Origin: Chlorokybus atmophyticus
Lineage: Eukaryota; Plantae; Mesostigma and Chlorokybus algae
Direction of reading: 5' to 3'
Assembly: GCA_009103225.1 (NCBI GenBank)
Contig: RHPI01002533.1
Location: 647,368 to 711,367 of the forward strand
DNA length: 64,000 bases
A model generated the notes under the pieces. That model ran no database searches. It saw nothing but the letters and a program-made list of their open reading frames with translations, and was not told the DNA's origin. A program made the position numbers and the translations under genes. How positions within the stretch are numbered: position 1 is the first letter of the stretch; every line of letters begins with the position of its first letter. Below, piece by piece: positions 9,601 to 57,912 of the stretch.

Positions 9601-9610
9601 AACCCTAAAA
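9601..9610. promoter_or_regulatory. Telo-box-like motif AACCCTAAAA in IMP3/AP4B divergent promoter
   Basis: Motif lies in the 426-bp interval between the IMP3 and AP4B start codons; function inferred. Confidence 0.4.
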
Positions 9611-9760: not shown

Positions 9761-12700
9761 ATGAATATAGACAATAGGAAGGGCGAGCTTGCGGAGATCC
9801 GGGCCCAGCTGCGCAGTCTCGCCGGCAGCCGGTAAGTGTGTTGCTGCTGGAGCCACACAGTTGTTGGGTTCTTGGTCAGAGGGCGTGTCGGAAGCAGCAT
9901 CCCGGTAGCATCAGCTCGTAGCCAAGCCTGGCCTCCATTCGATTGACGCAGTGATAACGTAAATGTAAACTCATCTCAAATCTCACCGTTTGAGGTGGTC
10001 TTGTGTCTTACCAATTGCTGATTCGTCTCGGACTGTGCTCTCAACCTCTCTGAGTTTATGTTTAGTTGAGGTTGATGCGCATAGCAGAGTCGCGTGGCAG
10101 TAATGTGCATGTGACGTAACCTTCTGCGTGTGCATGCAGGTCCAACGAAAGCAATGTCGCCAGGCGTGAAGTTTTCAAGCGTGTTGTTTCCTACATGACG
10201 GTAAGTGGTTGCCTGCCGACACCATGTAGTTATATATAGTTTTCATCAGCGAGCTCTTCCTTTTGGTAAAAAGACTCTACTTGTTGCACACAGACACACA
10301 TATGTGAAGGCTGGTATGCTGCACGCAGTCTTGTAAACACGTTGCCAATTCAGAATGCAAACAGACCTCCTTCAGCAGTGTTTTCAAGTCTTGTGCACAG
10401 GTTGGCATCGATGTCTCAAGCATTTTCTCCGAAATGATCATGTGCACCGGTAACACCAATGATGTCGTGCTGAAGAAGATGTGTTACCTCTACCTGTCAA
10501 CTTACGCTCATCACCAGTCGGACTTGGCTCTGCTCACTGTCAACTTTCTGCAAAAGGTGCGCCTTGCTGCTTGTGCATGACTGTCATGCATTCAGAGAAG
10601 CTGAAGAAGCTAATCTGTAGGATTGTCGTGATGACGATCCGATGATCCGTGGCTTGGCTCTTCGCACGCTGTGCTCGCTGCGTGTGAAGAACCTGGTGGA
10701 GTATCTGGTGGGTCCCCTGGAGCAGGCTCTCAAGGACGCGCACTCGTACGTCCGCAAAACCGCCTGCATGGGAGTGCTCAAGCTGCACTACCTCGCGCCT
10801 AGTGCAGCGGAAGATGCGGGATTCATCGGAGATGTCCGCGGATTGCTTCTGCAGGATCGAGACGGGCAGGTAGTTGCCTTGCTCTGTCAGCCAGTCCTAC
10901 CTGCAAGTAGTGATGTTGGTATCGTACAAAGTGGCACATGCACTGCTCACTCATCAGCACGCTTGGTTGCGTTTCAAGTAGCACTTGGCAGCGTGTTCAT
11001 GGCGGTGGTGTGGCTGCGGGTTGTGCTTATAGTTGTGTCAATCTGCTTGGCGTGCAGGTGGTGGCGACAGCCTTGCAGGTGCTGCGAGAAATTCTATCTT
11101 CCAGCAGGGGTGCGGGCGGTGGAGAAGCAGCCGTGGAGACGTCCGCTGTGTTGGTCAGCCGCCAGCTGGTGTATGCGCTGCTCAACCGCATGAAGGAGTT
11201 CAGGTAGTTGAGCGAGTGTGCTTTGGCTATTAAGCCCTCATATTTGCAAAGATTGCTTGTGATCGCTTACTTGCCAAATGCTTACCTGCCCATCTGTGCA
11301 GCGAATGGTCACAATGCGCTGTTCTGGATCTTGTGGCCTCGTACAGCCCTGAGAACTCTGAGGAGATCTTTGACATCATGAACGTGCTTGAAGACCGCAT
11401 GCAACACGCCAACAGCGCGGTTGTTCTGGCTACTGTGAAAGTGTTTCTGCACCTGACACTGCCCTTGCCAGCCGTGCATCAGCAGGTAGGTTGCCATGTA
11501 GTGCATTCAAGGCTTTGGGTGTTGTGGAATGCATGCAGGAATGACGGGACATTTGCCATGCAGGTTTATGAACGCATCAAAGCCCCTTTGTTAACACTCG
11601 TACGCAGCCCGAGTCCAGAGATCGCATACGCAGTCCTTGTTCATATGCACCTGATGGTCACGCGTGCACCCATTCTGTTCTCCTCCGAGTACAAGAACTT
11701 CTATTGCCGCTATAACGACCCTACATATGTCAAGAAGTTGAAGCTGGAAATGCTCACTGCTGTTGCCGATGGAAGCAACACGTATGATATAGGTGTGCTG
11801 CTTGACGCGATGTTGTGTAGGAGTGTGTTTGTTCCAGCTTGATTGATGGTGCCTTGACAGTGACGGAGTTGAGTGAGTACGTGGCCGATATTGATGAAAC
11901 CATTGCAAGGCTGTCATTGCGGGCTATTGGTCGCATCGCGCTGCAAAGTGATGATGCTCCAGAAGTTGGTGAGCGGCTTCTACAGGTCCGTACAACTGCA
12001 TTGCACGACTTGCAGTTGCACTAGTCTGTGGCATTGTTTAACTCCTCTACTGGCTGCAGTTTTTGGACAGTGGAGCAGATTACATTGTTGCAGAAACGTT
12101 GATTGTTACCAAAGACCTGTTGCGGCGATATCCAAAACGCGCTGCTTCGTGGGTGACGGCGGTAGCTGACGTGCCTGTGGCTGATATACAGGTCAGCCTC
12201 GGCTGTACTTCTATTGTTGTCATTGTGCATTCATGCCATCTGTGAGTCCGGGCACAGTTTTGTCATTGCGTTTGTGTTTGACTTGTTTGTAACACTTCAT
12301 TCACACGTCTTTGCATGCGAGTATCCTTACAATTGCATATTGCAGGAGCCCGATGCTCGTGCAGCTTTGATATGGATATTTGGCGAGTATGGACAAGAGC
12401 TGCCAGATGCACCCTATGTTCTAGAAAACCTAGCCCAAACCTTTCTGGATGAGGAGTCACCCAAGGTGTGCCAGCCGGTTTCACACGATACTGAAACTTG
12501 CTCTGATGTTTGTGGCCACCCTCAATCACATCATGCTGCCTTCGCTGCTTTCTTGTATTAAGTTCGTTTTGGTTTCCAAGCATAGAGAACGCTCTTGCTT
12601 TGTCAGCACAAGTATGCATGGCAACAATGCGTGCAGCATCTGTTTGCAGGTCAGATCGGAGCTGTTAACGGCTGCCGCAAAGCTGTTCTTCCAGCGCCCG

Positions 12701-40846: not shown

Positions 40847-40858
40847 CCCTAACCCTAA
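40847..40858. promoter_or_regulatory. Tandem telomeric dimer CCCTAACCCTAA upstream of ZC3H15
   Basis: About 180 bp upstream of ATG 41038 in a divergent promoter/5' region; function inferred. Confidence 0.45.
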
Positions 40859-44665: not shown

Positions 44666-46897
<2,232 letters not shown>

Positions 46898-47827
46898 CGC
46901 TAGCATGCATCACATGAACCAGTGATTGGTGATTGTAATGCATGTGTTTGTGTTGTTGATCTCACATCTGCATGGTGAATACTAGCACATAATGAGCAAG
47001 TGGTATGTGCGCACATTTATTAGCTTAGGCAAGCTAACAATATTAATATTAAATAAATATGCTCTCAACGGTAAGAGAGTATATATTCTCTTAAACACCG
47101 TGCGTATCGAGCTGACACTTCAGCACTTGATGATACAATTATGCTGTAATCAAATACGCAAAGCTTGATTAAGACACCTTATATGTGATCAGTCGACAAC
47201 GGATTATGTGGGCACAGACATTTGCGGGAGGACATTCAGCAGTTGCAGTGATTATGTACAAGACACATGGTGGTGGCGTATGGTGTGGAGCAACAATGGG
47301 TTAATGGTGAATATTCATTATAACACATGGTTTGCTAGGGTACAACATGTATGATGCAGGATTTGAGTGCTAGTTGCTCGTTCATCATGTGTTCGCCTGG
47401 CAATGCTCCCGGGCGTGCTTTTTGTGATTGCTTGGGACTTGATGCATGTGATTCAATATGTTTTAGTGCCATATTTCGCTCCACTCGCATGTTAACCTGT
47501 TTCATAGCATATGAAGCAAGCTCTATGCCGGACAATCTGCTTTCAACTCAAGTTTCACTGAGCAGGAGAGTGTACAGCTGTTGTGCAAAGCAATTGCACA
47601 ACTGAACCGCTAGCTTGAAACTATGACTTTGCAATCTGCGTAGCTTACAGCCTAGTAGGGTAGATATACATAGCTATACAGTTTCTGTACAGGTGCTACA
47701 ATACAGTGCAGCAGTAAGCAGCACTACTGGAGGTCAGATGCACGACCTTGACCGAGTTGCAGGTCGCGGATGACCAGACTCTGCGGAGACAAGTCTCAAT
47801 CGACTTCAGAGGCAATGGCAGGAGGCC

Positions 47828-50191
47828 TCATGCTTGTGCTGTAGCTGGTTCCATGCTCAACTCCTGTTTCACGCTGCCAGGCATTCGCTTTTTTGGTGGT
47901 CTTGCTGCAGCCTCTATCAATTTGGCTTCGCGATCTGCGGCATCTGCGTCGGCGTCTTGCTTGACAGTGCCAGGGCGTTTCTTTGGTGGTCGAGCAGAAG
48001 CCTCAGCCAACTTCGCATCTCGCGCGGTTTGCTCAGCATCTCTTGCTGCCCCCTCTTCTGCTGAACGCAGAGCAATGTCAGTTGCAAACTGGTCAACTAG
48101 AACTGCATTGGCGCAAAGAAGCAGCGTCACTACCACCTCACTGCAATAATTAGCCGCTTAATGTGTACAAGAGGACAAACAGACACCAGATTGCGTCCCA
48201 TGGCTGAACTGATCACGTTCACTGCAGGCTTGTGACACATGCATCACTCCATGTTTCTCACCTTCCTGGGCATGTGAGTACAAGCCACTTTTTGAGTCGC
48301 TGTCCTCTTCCGCACTGGGCTGACCTTGTGCATCAGCACTTTGCCCTCGTCCTCCCACACGACTCCGCCCACGGCCTGAGGAGCAACAAGAGACATGAGA
48401 CCTTATGACCACACATTCCTCATGGCTGCAGGAGCCACATCACAGGTCAGTTTCTAATGTAGACTATGACTGGCAGTGAGCATACCTGATCGTTGGCCCT
48501 TCACAGCAGCAGGAATAACCGCCACAGGATCCAGCTTACGCGACTTGCCCTGTGACGCGGAGCGTTTGGCCGTTGCATCGCGTTCATGTTTGCGGCGAAC
48601 TGGCTCGCCCGCCCCAAGCTTGTACAAAGTCTTATTCTGGAAGCAAGCACTGTTAGGAGTGCATGTGACAAGTTGTGAAACACCTGCTACAACATCTCAC
48701 CGCATGACTGACTTTGGTAAGCTTGCACTCGTCAGTCATCAACTTCAATCGCTGTGGAAGCTGCTTCCGTAGCTTTTGATCAACTTCATAGGTGTCCTGT
48801 GCACAGCAGATAGTTCAGGAAACATTCCCAAGCACGGAAGTCACCAGGCACGTACCTCAATGTACTTGACAATGCTAGTAACCGAAGAACCGTTCTTCTC
48901 TTGCAATGCAAGCACTGCTGCCAGCGTCATTTCTTCATACCTAAGAGCAGAGACCACATGAGATAGACAAAATTGAGTCAAAGCAACTATGCGCCACGCA
49001 TGACAACAATCTTCCGCCTACGTAGTTGCTGGCAACTTGGCTGGTCGTTCTGGCTCTACAGTGCGATGCTCTGCTTCTGTGGTTTCCGCCATAAGCTGCT
49101 CCGGCACGCAAGTCTGCTCAATCACCGCCATGTGACTTGCATGCTCTGGTTCCATGTGTTCTTGTTCCAGGTGCTCGACATGCTGGACACCTTCCATCGG
49201 CTCTGCTGGTTCGAGGTGCTCTACATGCTCATGCCCCATATGTTCAATGTGTCCCAGATGTTCTCCTTGAAGATGTTCTTCTTCCTCGTGCTGCAAGTGC
49301 TCATGTGCCAACTCCTGCTCATGCTCGTGTTCTGCTTGGTGTGCAGCCTCGAGATCATCCGTGCCTTCCGTAGGCACCGGCATAGCTTCACCATCATTGG
49401 CAACCCACACTGGGAAACACAGAGGCTTCGCATCAGCCCCAATGGCACTTGAGCAGAGGCACAACCCAAGTTGGATACCGCAATCACAACCGTCAACATT
49501 GGAGGCCGCATTGGCACCTGTTGGCTCAGCTGGATAAGCATCGGTCATGGGGTCTCCAAGTGATATGACGCCAGTGTGCGCAGTGACCCCAAGAGCAGCA
49601 GCATCCTAATTCAAAAACACAAAAGTGAGCAAGCTCGGCACAACGCATGTGCATGGTTAGAAGAGGGCAATGCCACATGCAAATGGTCACAACACGAAAC
49701 ACACCGGAACAGCAGCAGCTGCCGCCAGTTGTTTCTTCGCCTTTGGCATCTTGGGTTTCTTAATCTTCCCTGGCCCCTTGAGCTTAGGAGTGCCCTCAAT
49801 GCCCGCAGCAACGTTCATGTTGCGCCACTTGTCCTGCAGAGGAACTCCAGCAATGAGATGGACAACCTTCAACAAACAACAATTATAATCCTGCACAATC
49901 AACAAGACGCACCTTCAGGTCTACATTGGACCGCTCTGCCAAAGCGGGACCAAACTTGGGGTCCTTCTGTATAGCTCGCCATTTGCCAGGGCCATATTTT
50001 GCAACCCCCTGCAACAATGATGCTGTCAATTCCAGACTAACCCTAATGCATACTTAGCCTTGGCAGCAGTGAAAACGAACCTACATAGGTCAACCAATAG
50101 CAAATTGCAGCAAAGATTCACCGACCAAGGCTTTTACCTGACGGAGGGCAGACTCCTCCTCCGCAGTCCATTTGGACTTGGGGGCGCCCAT
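47828..50191 (-). CDS. TRB: Single-Myb-histone telomere repeat-binding factor (Myb telobox + H1/H5 globular + coiled coil)
   Basis: Spliced Myb MGAPKSKWTAEEESALRQ/GVAKYGPGKWRAIQKDPKFGPALAERSNVDLK/DKWRNM; GH1-like YEEMTLAAVLALQEKNGSSVTSIVKYIE/DTYEVDQKLRKQLPQRLKLMTDECKLTK/NKTLYKL; Ala/Glu helix AEEGAARDAEQTARDAKLAEA. Confidence 0.92.
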
Positions 50192-50398
50192 GCCTCGAGC
50201 CACTGCTCTCGCTGCCGGCCCGCCTGCGCGGGCAGTATCATAGACGTCCTCCAGTGGTCATGCACTTGCGGCAATTCCGACGAGGGGACAGGCCGAGCAG
50301 ACCACAAAGGGAGCCCACCCCCTGGCCGCCGCCCCTGCCGCCCCGATGTGCAGCGACACCCTGCAGGAGGACAATGCTGGCTATGGCGGAATCTGTGC

Positions 50399-50630
50399 TT
50401 AGGGTTTCATTAGGGTTTCCACAATTTCCGCCGTCAGATGGCGCATCCAATGGTCAGCACGCCCTCGCATTAGGGTTTCGCACAACCCGTACAAAACCCT
50501 AACCCTAATTAGGGTTGACACTGACCGCGAACCCTAATTTAACCCTAAATGAACCCTAAAAAAGCCCTAAAGCGAACCCTAATTAGGGTTCATTTAGGGT
50601 TCAAACAATAAGTGAACCCTAATTAGGGTT
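50399..50630. promoter_or_regulatory. Dense interstitial telomeric-motif (telo-box) array in the TRB/LNR divergent promoter
   Basis: 15 CCCTAA/TTAGGG hexamers in 232 bp; three AACCCTAATTAGGGTT palindromes (50501, 50575, 50615). Confidence 0.85.
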
Positions 50631-51000
50631 GCAACTCGCCAAAAGGTGAGGTGTACATAGCCGTTTGCCACGTTGGTATGTAAACCGAGTTAGCCCGTTT
50701 CCCAGTTACCAAAGTGGACACAGTTAAAAGCACCAGACGTTACACAGATGTCCCCCATGCTCGCTGGCTTCATGTGAGCCCTAGGATGTTACTGAGGACT
50801 ATCCAGTCAGTCAGTATCTTGCTTGTCGTTTGCGAACAATTTGATTCGGCTAACCAAGGTCGTTTTCTCTTAACCTGACCTAAGCAAGCCGGGGGGCCAC
50901 GTGCATACTTTGCCGATATTCGCCGCAGCACGACACTCATCAACGTCAGAGGGATATCGGTTCCCAATGCAAACTGGTTGTTAACAGCAGCAGCGGCAAC

Positions 51001-52421
51001 ATGAAGGTGGTGGAGGAGGAGGCGATGGCGATGACCCCCCCTCTCGCCGCATGTTGTTGCAGGGTGTTCTTATTGTCGCTGGTTGCGCGCGTCATTGTCG
51101 CGGCTGCGGGCAATAGCGGTAATGCTGCCTCCAGGTTTGAGCGTGGCCGTTGTCATGCACAGCATGACTTCAGGATGAGGCGTGCGTATTTTCACTTTAA
51201 TTAGGATCACATTGGCGTGCCGTTACTTGGCAATTGGTGAAACGTCTGTTGATGCAGCGCTGCTTGATCTCACTTTTCAAACGGTGACACAAGTACAGCA
51301 AGACAACAACATCCCTCAAGCATATCATGCTCCCCTGCAAATGTCGGTCGTCCAACATGTTGATAAGCAGAAGAGGAACAATGGAGATCAGATTGCACAT
51401 GATCTGCATTTTGTGCATGCACACAAGCAAACAATGGACACTCGGTGACAGGTCACTGGGACAAGGTATAAACACGCGCACATGCATGCGTGCACATCAA
51501 CACATGTACACGCAACACACCTACCCACGCCACTACACACACGCATACAGAGTAGTTGCTTTCAGTGTATCAAGCATACAACTGGCCCCTCGTAATCGCC
51601 AACCAGCACAGCTCCATCAATAAATCTGATGAGAATTGTTTACTGTTCGAGCAGCTGTGCCGGAAGGATACTGCGCTCCAGGTTGCCGCGAGGCCTTTGT
51701 TGGGGACCGCAACTGCGACCGCGAGTGTTACAACGAAGCCTGCCGCTGGGATGCAGACGACTGCAAAGACAAAGGTAGGTGGCTTCTTGTAAGGACACCC
51801 AACATGTGTGACTGCATGACAACGAGTATTTTGAAGCCAGTGTGTTTTCTCAACTGTGTCTTAGCTGAGTTGAGAAGGGTTGTTGTGATGGGCGAATTCT
51901 ACCGGCACGTCGACCACATAGAGTACCACGCTGTCGGACCCGATGGTGAGGCCAAGCCGATATCCATTGCTGCGGGACGGAAGTGGGAAGGCATTGACAC
52001 CACCGGAGAAGGGGAGGTGAGGGATAGTTTGGCATGTTGCTTGTTGTCACAAACACACGAACACATGCACACATGCACATTCGTGTGTGTGCACACGTCT
52101 GCCGACATGCACATTCACGCGTGTGTGTGTGCTATGCTCACATGCATGGACACATGCACAGGCAAACACAAGCATGCGCACACGCTCTCACACGCTCATG
52201 AGTGTGTGAGAGCACACGTACGCACATGCACACTCACATTAATACTTTTCGACATGCAGGCTCCAGACTGGCGCGAGCTGATTAACGCCCCGCCCATTGA
52301 TGAGCTTGAGGGCCCGCTGGAGGAGAAGGTCGACGATCCCGACAGGCATAGATATGAAGCCCCAGTGTCGATGGAGGAGCTTGAAGCGCCGGAGCAGGAT
52401 TTCCTAAATCTACATTTCTAA
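51001..52421 (+). CDS. Predicted secreted protein with one LNR (Lin-12/Notch) repeat
   Basis: Hydrophobic N-terminal segment (VFLLSLVARVIVAAA); exon CAPGCREAFVGDRNCDRECYNEACRWDADDC fits six-Cys LNR spacing; acidic C-terminus. Start codon and early exons uncertain. Confidence 0.65.
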
Positions 52422-57900: not shown

Positions 57901-57912
57901 TTAGGGTTAGGG
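57901..57912. promoter_or_regulatory. Tandem telomeric dimer TTAGGGTTAGGG upstream of CCDC87-like ATG
   Basis: 30 bp upstream of ATG 57871 on the minus strand; function inferred. Confidence 0.4.

What the first reader, a model, noticed from the sequence alone, without database searches (positions are those of the whole stretch)
47828..50630. Telomere-repeat-binding factor gene with a dense array of its own predicted binding sites in its promoter: candidate autoregulatory telo-box circuit
Seen: an intact TRB/SMH gene (telobox Myb LKDKWRN) with 15 CCCTAA/TTAGGG hexamers 208-439 bp upstream of its ATG. About 0.1 would be expected in 232 bp at uniform composition. A further CTAACCCTAA lies in intron 1 (50037-50046). 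Established: plant TRBs bind double-stranded telomeric repeats and promoter telo-boxes and recruit chromatin modifiers including PRC2. Inference: TRB occupies its own promoter, giving feedback control of its dosage, possibly titrated by genome-wide telomeric and telo-box load. I know of no such description in algae.
Basis: partly seen in the sequence, partly recalled or inferred. Interest (0 to 1): 0.85.

Follow-up and report, generated by a model that had tools for sequence, protein, structure and literature searches.

The report
Telo-box array at TRB gene promoter
In the early-branching alga Chlorokybus, the gene for the telomere-repeat-binding protein TRB starts right next to 15 copies of the short DNA word that TRB proteins recognise, so the protein probably controls its own production, though no binding has been tested.

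Summary
Window 50399-50630 holds 15 CCCTAA/TTAGGG hexamers, against 0.11 expected and 13 in the other 63.7 kb. Fourteen extend to AACCCTAA. They form 11-bp phased runs and three perfect 16-bp palindromes, not a 6-bp telomere tract.

The minus-strand gene is the Chlorokybus TRB (JGI Chlat1 model, 477 aa), with a Myb and a GH1 domain, both above Pfam cut-offs. Spliced transcript contigs from two studies confirm 10 exons. One contig ends at 50397, 2 bp from the first box, so the array is the proximal promoter. It is the TRB-side part of a ~590-bp divergent promoter.

Other 5' regions in the window carry one or two boxes. Among 28 non-redundant TRB-like loci from other plants, 20 have AACCCTA within 1 kb upstream of the ATG (43 sites; permuted-word median 3). 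Two ferns have (TTAGGG)3-5 clusters there. None reaches the Chlorokybus density.

Self-binding and feedback remain inferred. I could not scan the whole genome, so uniqueness is shown only for this window. The Chlorokybus TRB itself was published in 2025. I found no paper on TRB self-regulation. The scan's earlier notes on this genome list single telo-boxes and TTAGGG tracts elsewhere, but no similar array.

The parts
50399..50630 (.). Cluster of 15 telo-box cores (14 AACCCTAA, 1 AGCCCTAA), 8 in one orientation and 7 in the other, plus decayed units at about 50484 (AACCCGTA) and 50604 (AACAATAA)
50529..50582 (+). 11-bp phased run of five boxes (consensus unit GAACCCTAAAT)
   Evidence: Tandem Repeats Finder: period 11, 4.8 copies; start spacings 11, 11, 11, 12
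50583..50603 (-). Two boxes in the opposite orientation, 11 bp apart; inverted copy of part of the run above (22 nt, 95% complementary)
50399..50419 (-). Two boxes (AAACCCTAA type) 11 bp apart, next to the transcript 5' end
50501..50516 (.). Perfect 16-bp palindrome AACCCTAATTAGGGTT, preceded by the only true 6-bp tandem pair (50497-50508)
50575..50590 (.). Second perfect 16-bp palindrome
50615..50630 (.). Third perfect 16-bp palindrome
50501..50630 (.). Roughly 130-bp nested inverted repeat formed by the distal half of the array
   Evidence: Folded as single-stranded DNA: -31.9 kcal/mol, z = -8.6 against shuffles
47600..50397 (-). TRB transcript as seen in contigs. The 5' end is at 50397 in X1 and at 50335 followed by adapter in X2. 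The contig runs about 62 nt below 47600.
47828..50191 (-). TRB coding sequence, 10 exons: 50138-50191, 49913-50008, 49705-49833, 49518-49605, 49022-49409, 48856-48940, 48701-48796, 48486-48636, 48262-48375, 47828-48060. It encodes 477 aa.
   Evidence: joints; identical to P0003
49705..50191 (-). Three exons encoding the Myb domain (residues 5-56, motif VDLKDKWRN)
   Evidence: Pfam; PDB; alignment
48486..48940 (-). Three exons encoding the GH1 / linker-histone domain (residues 252-310)
   Evidence: Pfam
50037..50046 (+). Extra telo-box (CTAACCCTAA) in TRB intron 1
50985..51118 (+). First exon of the divergent neighbour (ATG 51001), spliced on to an LNR-domain exon at about 51655
40847..40858 (+). 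Comparison site: tandem double telo-box about 190 bp upstream of the ATG (41039) of a DFRP1/TMA46-type gene
57901..57912 (-). Comparison site: tandem double telo-box about 35 bp upstream of a putative minus-strand ATG
9601..9608 (+). Comparison site: single AACCCTAA about 160 bp upstream of a putative ATG at 9761

Best explanation
The 232-bp segment is the proximal promoter of the TRB gene, which PMC12616469 reports as single in streptophyte algae. It is built as a same-motif cluster of 15 telo-box cores. The core AACCCTAA equals one and a third units of this alga's own TTAGGG telomere repeat. It is also the core word that plant TRB Myb domains recognise. The most likely working is that TRB binds its own promoter. 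Its Myb domain would read each box, and multimerisation would favour cooperative filling of boxes set one helical turn (11 bp) apart or paired as palindromes. Occupancy would then feed back on transcription. The feedback is probably negative, because land-plant TRBs recruit PRC2 and JMJ14, and moss trb mutants raise expression of telo-box genes. Shown here: the motif cluster and its architecture, the gene's identity, its expression and exon structure, the array's position at the transcript start, and enrichment of the same word upstream of TRB genes in many plants. Inferred: binding by TRB, cooperativity, the sign of the feedback, and any link to telomere load.
For: Fifteen sites against 0.11 expected. 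The 8-bp core has 1 mismatch in 120 positions, while flanking bases vary overall. Phasing is 11 bp, with three palindromes. The gene has Myb and GH1 domains above Pfam cut-offs and a telomeric-type Myb domain. A transcript contig ends 2 bp from the first box. All four AACCCTAA 8-mers outside the array lie in gene 5' regions or TRB intron 1, with only 1-2 per promoter. So the word is a promoter element here, and TRB has about seven times the usual dose. In 28 non-redundant TRB-like loci from other plants, 20 carry AACCCTA within 1 kb upstream of the ATG. That is 43 sites, first of 140 letter permutations (median 3), against 6 in gene bodies and 6 far upstream. Clusters of a different design occur in two ferns and a Brassicaceae TRB1-like gene. 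Literature: one telo-box suffices for TRB binding (PMC10167121). Moss trb mutants de-repress telo-box genes, and streptophyte algae have a single TRB (PMC12616469). The Chlorokybus telomere repeat is CCCTAA (PMC8287931).
Against: There are no binding or expression data for this alga. Telo-boxes are a common promoter word in plants, and I had no matched control set of unrelated plant promoters, so the cross-species enrichment may only place TRB among housekeeping genes. The array shows clear signs of duplication: 11-bp tandem units and inverted copies whose spacers also match. Its size could therefore be partly a mutational accident. No sampled orthologue approaches 15 sites, and several have none. 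Other telo-box-binding proteins may exist in Chlorokybus. The promoter is shared with a divergent gene. Uniqueness is shown for 64 kb only.
Confidence: 0.45

Rival explanations
1. Ordinary telo-box housekeeping promoter. The boxes drive or mark constitutive expression of TRB, and perhaps of the divergent LNR gene, like the 1-2 boxes at other genes. They are read by TRB or another factor. The high copy number adds nothing specific, so there is no meaningful dosage feedback.
For: Telo-boxes lie in the other 5' regions of the window, including a translation-associated DFRP1/TMA46 gene. An earlier scan note reports boxes at head-to-head gene pairs. The array lies in a divergent promoter. Most orthologous loci have only 1-5 boxes.
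Against: The dose is 14-15 boxes against 1-2 at the other genes of the window. The array hugs the TRB start and lies 355 bp from the neighbour's.
Confidence: 0.3
2. Neutral repeat growth. One or two functional boxes were multiplied by slippage of an 11-bp unit and by an inverted duplication. The extra copies are young and have no function.
For: Period-11 arrays have 76-100% matches. Inverted copies match in their spacers too (22 nt at 95%; 27 nt at 89%). The inverted-repeat fold is strong, z = -8.6. Decayed units are present.
Against: The spacers of the tandem units all differ while the cores are almost invariant, which fits selection on the cores. Multi-box clusters of a different design sit upstream of TRB in ferns and a Brassicaceae relative.
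Confidence: 0.15
3. Transposon-derived or dispersed repeat, for example subterminal repeats of a DNA transposon or a fold-back element that landed next to TRB by chance.
For: The structure is palindromic. A pogo/Tc5-type transposase remnant lies 4 kb away. An unchecked scan note describes a pogo-like element with telomeric repeats near its end on another piece of the genome. One DNA contig of run X5 joins 50381-50440 to 140 nt of unrelated sequence.
Against: There is no other copy of the array or its flanks in the window. No terminal inverted repeat pairs the array with any other site in 43.8-51 kb. The motif equals the promoter word used at other genes.
Confidence: 0.07
4. Interstitial telomeric sequence left by telomerase or by repair of a break.
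For: The hexamer matches the species' telomere repeat. The genome holds many internal (TTAGGG)n tracts according to scan notes.
Against: Only one 2-unit head-to-tail pair exists. The period is 11, not 6, and both orientations are interleaved.
Confidence: 0.03

Closest known systems
Plant telo-box promoter elements bound by TRB1-3 (Arabidopsis, Physcomitrium)
   Same: Same core word (AAACCCTAA / AACCCTAA). Same position at or just upstream of the transcript start. Same protein family as the presumed reader. Boxes also occur at a translation-associated gene in this window.
   Different: The plant boxes I saw here and in the papers read are single or few. No paper I found mentions TRB genes as TRB targets.
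TRB / SMH (single-Myb-histone) protein family
   Same: N-terminal telomeric Myb domain, central GH1 domain, Ala/Glu-rich C-terminal segment ending in RPPKK.
   Different: There is a roughly 150-aa acidic, His-rich insert between Myb and GH1. The C-terminal segment is shorter and has a duplicated ARPPKKR motif. PMC12616469 calls the Chlorokybus coiled coil disordered.
Interstitial telomeric sequences
   Same: Telomere-type hexamers away from chromosome ends.
   Different: Not head-to-tail: the period is 11 bp and orientations are mixed. The fern TRB loci, by contrast, do carry short true (TTAGGG)3-5 tracts.
Telomere-binding proteins that also act at promoters: yeast Rap1/Tbf1, mammalian TRF1/TRF2 at internal TTAGGG sites
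   Same: Same idea of a telomere-repeat reader doubling as a gene regulator, with the pool possibly shared between telomeres and promoters. The closest solved Myb domains are TRF2/TRF1.
   Different: Different protein architectures. The reported Rap1 sites in the RAP1 promoter and the telomere-length-dependent TRF2 partition are recalled from memory and were not checked here.
Same-motif binding-site clusters at autoregulated transcription-factor genes
   Same: Many copies of the factor's own site in its own promoter.
   Different: This is a general design principle, not a family. Here the sites also equal the chromosome-end repeat.

Membership tests
TRB / SMH protein | N-terminal single Myb domain with the telobox helix (VDLKDKWRN) | tested here: met
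   Pfam Myb_DNA-binding at residues 5-56, 37 bits against a 24.4 cut-off. LKDKWRN is invariant in a 10-sequence alignment. Best solved relatives are the TRF2/TRF1 Myb domains, E = 7e-9.
TRB / SMH protein | Central GH1 (linker histone H1/H5) domain | tested here: met
   Pfam Linker_histone at residues 252-310, 42.7 bits against a 22.4 cut-off.
TRB / SMH protein | C-terminal coiled coil | tested here: inconclusive
   It aligns to the Ala/Glu-rich segment and the RPPKK end of other TRBs, but is shorter and interrupted. PMC12616469 reports it as disordered. No structure prediction was run.
TRB / SMH protein | Binds double-stranded telomeric repeats or telo-boxes | not testable with these tools
   Needs EMSA or DAP-seq.
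Telo-box cis-element | Core AAACCCTA(A) | tested here: met
   14 of 15 sites are AACCCTAA; 4 are the full AAACCCTAA.
Telo-box cis-element | Located near the transcription start or in the 5' region | tested here: met
   A transcript contig 5' end at 50397 is 2 bp from the first box. Contigs give only a minimum extent.
Telo-box cis-element | Occupied by TRB in vivo | not testable with these tools
   No ChIP or CUT&Tag data for Chlorokybus.
Autoregulatory transcription-factor circuit | Own recognition sites in own promoter | tested here: met
   By motif only.
Autoregulatory transcription-factor circuit | The factor changes its own transcription | not testable with these tools
   Needs a reporter or dosage experiment.
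Interstitial telomeric sequence | Head-to-tail repeats at the telomere period (6 bp here) | tested here: not met
   The period is 11. There is one 2-unit pair only, and orientations are mixed.
Transposon / dispersed repeat | Further copies, terminal repeats, target-site duplication | tested here: inconclusive
   None in this window. The rest of the genome could not be searched.

The most novel reading that the evidence does not exclude
TRB genes carry their own recognition word as an old and repeatedly renewed feature of the family. It appears as a phased 15-box array in Chlorokybus, the earliest lineage with a TRB, as (TTAGGG)3-5 tracts in ferns, and as 3-5 boxes in mosses and Brassicaceae. 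Because the same word makes up the telomeres, the free TRB pool would be set by competition between chromosome ends and the TRB promoter. TRB output would then report telomeric and telo-box load.
Probability: 0.2. Interest if true: 0.8.

Novelty: new variant of a known kind. Interest (0 to 1): 0.55.

Why it matters
TRBs link telomere maintenance with Polycomb, JMJ14 and PEAT chromatin control in plants, yet what sets TRB dosage is unknown. Chlorokybus represents the lineage in which TRB first appears, and PMC12616469 reports a single TRB in streptophyte algae. A dense, ordered array of TRB sites at its own start gives a simple testable model of dosage control, with no paralogue redundancy. The cross-species enrichment of the same word upstream of TRB genes suggests the loop could be general. 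It can be checked at once in existing Arabidopsis TRB ChIP-seq data.

Tried and rejected
- Searching with the large His/Glu-rich exon (49021-49605) found no homologues.
- An exact look-up of the window's own protein found no contig on record, and so did the Eutrema TRB1 look-up. Other Chlorokybus genomes could therefore not be fetched.
- The telomere-tract reading was rejected on period and orientation.
- The idea that the nearby pogo/Tc5 remnant and the array are two ends of one element was rejected. No inverted repeat pairs them, and the whole expressed TRB gene lies between them.
- Findings-index searches by sequence and by words gave no similar promoter array.
- Closterium P0174 (L001) has its Myb domain around residue 400 and no GH1 domain, so it is not a true orthologue. 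L049 and L061 are also doubtful. All three are kept in the 28 loci and contribute 0, 0 and 1 sites.
- Literature searches for TRB autoregulation, feedback or 'own promoter' found nothing relevant.

Full report
**Observation**

Reading 47600-51200 on the minus strand and counting the hexamer on both strands gives exactly 15 CCCTAA/TTAGGG between 50399 and 50628. The whole window has 28; dinucleotide-preserving shuffles give a mean of 13.5 and at most 22. From window composition 0.11 are expected in 232 bp, and the rate outside the array is 0.047 per 232 bp. The extra site in intron 1 (50037-50046) is present.

**Anatomy of the array**

- Fourteen of the fifteen sites are the 8-mer AACCCTAA and one is AGCCCTAA. 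Four carry the full plant telo-box AAACCCTAA.
- Eight sites point one way and seven the other.
- Same-strand neighbours are spaced 11, 11, 11, 12 and 11, 11 bp. Tandem Repeats Finder calls period-11 arrays at 50399-50419, 50529-50582 and 50583-50603.
- Three sites pairs form the perfect palindrome AACCCTAATTAGGGTT, at 50501, 50575 and 50615.
- Only one pair (50497-50508) is a true 6-bp head-to-tail repeat. The array is therefore not an internal telomere tract.
- The distal half folds as a roughly 130-nt nested inverted repeat (z = -8.6). Some inverted copies match in their spacers too (22 nt at 95%). Tandem and inverted duplication therefore contributed to its growth.
- Across all 15 units the 8-bp core has one mismatch in 120 positions, while the flanking bases are variable.
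- Decayed units sit at about 50484 and 50604.

**The gene**

A 32-residue query from exon 2 recovered a 477-aa protein, P0003, with 100% identity. Its source name is jgi/Chlat1/154/Chrsp1S00229, which is Chlorokybus.
- Pfam finds Myb_DNA-binding at residues 5-56 and Linker_histone at 252-310, both above the curated cut-offs.
- The closest solved structures are the human TRF2 and TRF1 telomeric Myb domains (E = 7e-9), with the KD(K/R)WR recognition helix aligned.
- In a ten-sequence alignment with algal, bryophyte, lycophyte and maize TRBs, the Myb domain is nearly invariant. The GH1 domain and the C-terminal Ala/Glu-rich segment ending in RPPKK also align. Chlorokybus has a roughly 150-residue acidic, His-rich insert and a duplicated ARPPKKR end.
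- Transcript contigs from two studies (X1, X2) lie on the window at 100% identity with nine GT..AG introns. They give ten exons whose coding part is 1434 bases, exactly P0003.

**Position of the array relative to transcription**

The X1 contig reaches 50397, 2 bp from the first box at 50399. The X2 contig stops at 50335 and runs into sequencing adapter. Contigs give only a minimum extent. Even so, the 5'UTR is at least 206 nt, and the array is the proximal promoter rather than a distant upstream element.

On the other side, a plus-strand transcript begins near 50985 (ATG 51001) and splices to an exon encoding an LNR domain. The two starts are about 590 bp apart. The array fills the TRB-proximal 40% of that interval.

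**How the word is used elsewhere in the window**

Outside the array there are only four AACCCTAA 8-mers.
- One is in TRB intron 1.
- One is a tandem pair member about 190 bp before the ATG of a DFRP1/TMA46-type gene (DFRP_C at 43.9 bits plus a CCCH finger).
- One is a tandem pair member about 35 bp before a putative minus-strand ATG.
- One is about 160 bp before a putative ATG at 9761.

In this alga the word therefore behaves as a promoter element with a usual dose of one or two. TRB carries about seven times that. No other copy of the array or its flanks exists in the window.

**What is known**

- Chlorokybus has a CCCTAA telomere repeat (PMC8287931). AACCCTAA is thus one and a third units of its own telomere.
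- TRBs were traced to Chlorokybophyceae in 2025 and found in four of five cryptic Chlorokybus species, with an unusual C-terminus. The same paper shows that moss trb mutants raise expression of genes with a telo-box near the start (PMC12616469).
- One telo-box is the minimal TRB recognition unit (PMC10167121).
- Earlier papers placed the origin in Klebsormidiophyceae, or found no TRB in unicellular algae.
- None of the papers I searched or read mentions TRB genes as TRB targets, or any self-regulation.

**Orthologue test**

I fetched TRB loci from NCBI genomes: Riccia, Sphagnum, Calypogeia, Selaginella, maize, Amborella, Brassica and Adiantum, plus a Closterium Myb protein. I added 80 metagenome contigs.

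After grouping near-identical upstream regions, 28 non-redundant loci remained. Results for the 7-mer AACCCTA:

| Region | Sites | Loci with a site |
|---|---|---|
| Within 1 kb upstream of the ATG | 43 | 20 of 28 |
| 140 permutations of the same letters, same region (median) | 3 | 3 |
| 1 kb of gene body | 6 | 6 of 28 |
| -3000 to -2000 | 6 | 3 of 21 |

The real word ranks first among the 140 permutations. The 8-mer AACCCTAA is likewise first of its 280 permutations.

Multi-box clusters occur in several loci:
- A fern contig has (TTAGGG)5 plus three more units at -514 to -427.
- Adiantum has (TTAGGG)3 at -339 to -322.
- A Brassicaceae TRB1-like gene has four sites, three of them TAGGGTTT, at -479 to -163.
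- A moss contig has five.

No locus reaches the Chlorokybus density (maximum 8 against 15). Several have none. Three of the 28 are doubtful TRBs.

I had no matched control of unrelated promoters. The only base rate I can cite is 9% of highly expressed moss genes with a box within 100 bp of the start, which is a stricter criterion than mine.

**Reading**

The array is best explained as a functional, TRB-proximal, same-motif binding-site cluster that TRB itself occupies, giving feedback on its own dosage.
- The 11-bp phasing would put successive boxes on one face of the helix.
- The palindromes would suit paired binding.
- The sign is probably negative, by analogy with land-plant TRB partners and the moss mutants.

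All of this is inference. The main rivals are:
- an ordinary housekeeping telo-box promoter whose copy number has no special meaning;
- neutral growth by duplication;
- with lower weight, a transposon-derived repeat.

Titration by telomere load is possible but wholly untested.

**Limits**

- One DNA contig of run X5 joins 50381-50440 to 140 nt of unrelated sequence. I cannot tell whether this is an assembly chimera, a variant or a second locus.
- No DNA contig covered 50441-50704.

Noticed in passing
L059:190-300 and L090:2660-2685: Two fern TRB loci, an unidentified fern contig and Adiantum capillus-veneris, carry short true (TTAGGG)3-5 tracts 320-515 bp upstream of the ATG, both starting GAATTAGGG. 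The unit is 6 bp although, from memory, ferns have 7-bp TTTAGGG telomeres.
   Followed up: partly
L066:2520-2840: A Brassicaceae TRB1-like gene has three canonical AAACCCTA boxes within 300 bp of its ATG and a fourth core at -479. Exon 1 is 100% identical to Eutrema TRB1. Public Arabidopsis TRB ChIP-seq could test self-binding directly.
   Followed up: partly
window:44666-46540: Remnant of a pogo/Tc5-type transposase (HTH_Tnp_Tc5 at 68 bits, DDE_1 at 56 bits) about 1 kb beyond the TRB 3' end. It is interrupted by a roughly 225-bp run of G containing an N, followed by a run of C (45876-46128), which looks like an assembly artefact or gap filler.
   Followed up: partly
window:41039-42740: DFRP1/TMA46 (ZC3H15-type) gene with a tandem double telo-box about 190 bp upstream of its ATG. 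This fits the land-plant link between telo-boxes and translation-associated genes.
   Followed up: partly
window:50381-50440: A 200-nt DNA contig of run X5 matches these 60 nt exactly but continues into 140 nt unlike the window. It could be a chimera, a structural variant or a second locus; this is unresolved.
   Followed up: no
P0043 (Tetraselmis striata), P0029 and P0037 (Logan contigs): Proteins with a TRB-like N-terminal Myb domain (75-78% identical over exon 2). Pfam finds no GH1 in P0043 or P0037 and only a sub-threshold one in P0029 (18.7 bits). P0043 is from a chlorophyte; the origin of P0029 and P0037 is unknown. They may bear on where the Myb-GH1 fusion arose.
   Followed up: partly
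P0015 (Mesotaenium endlicherianum): A full Myb + GH1 TRB exists in a zygnematophyte. This agrees with the 2025 phylogeny and contradicts the 2023 statement that the class lacks TRBs.
   Followed up: partly
window:51001-52421: The divergent neighbour encodes a signal-peptide or transmembrane start followed by an LNR (Notch/Lin-12 repeat) domain, which is uncommon in green algae.
   Followed up: no
window:49022-49409: The TRB has a roughly 150-residue acidic, His/Glu-rich insert with repeated EH-rich stretches between Myb and GH1. It is absent from all aligned orthologues and has no detectable homologue.
   Followed up: partly
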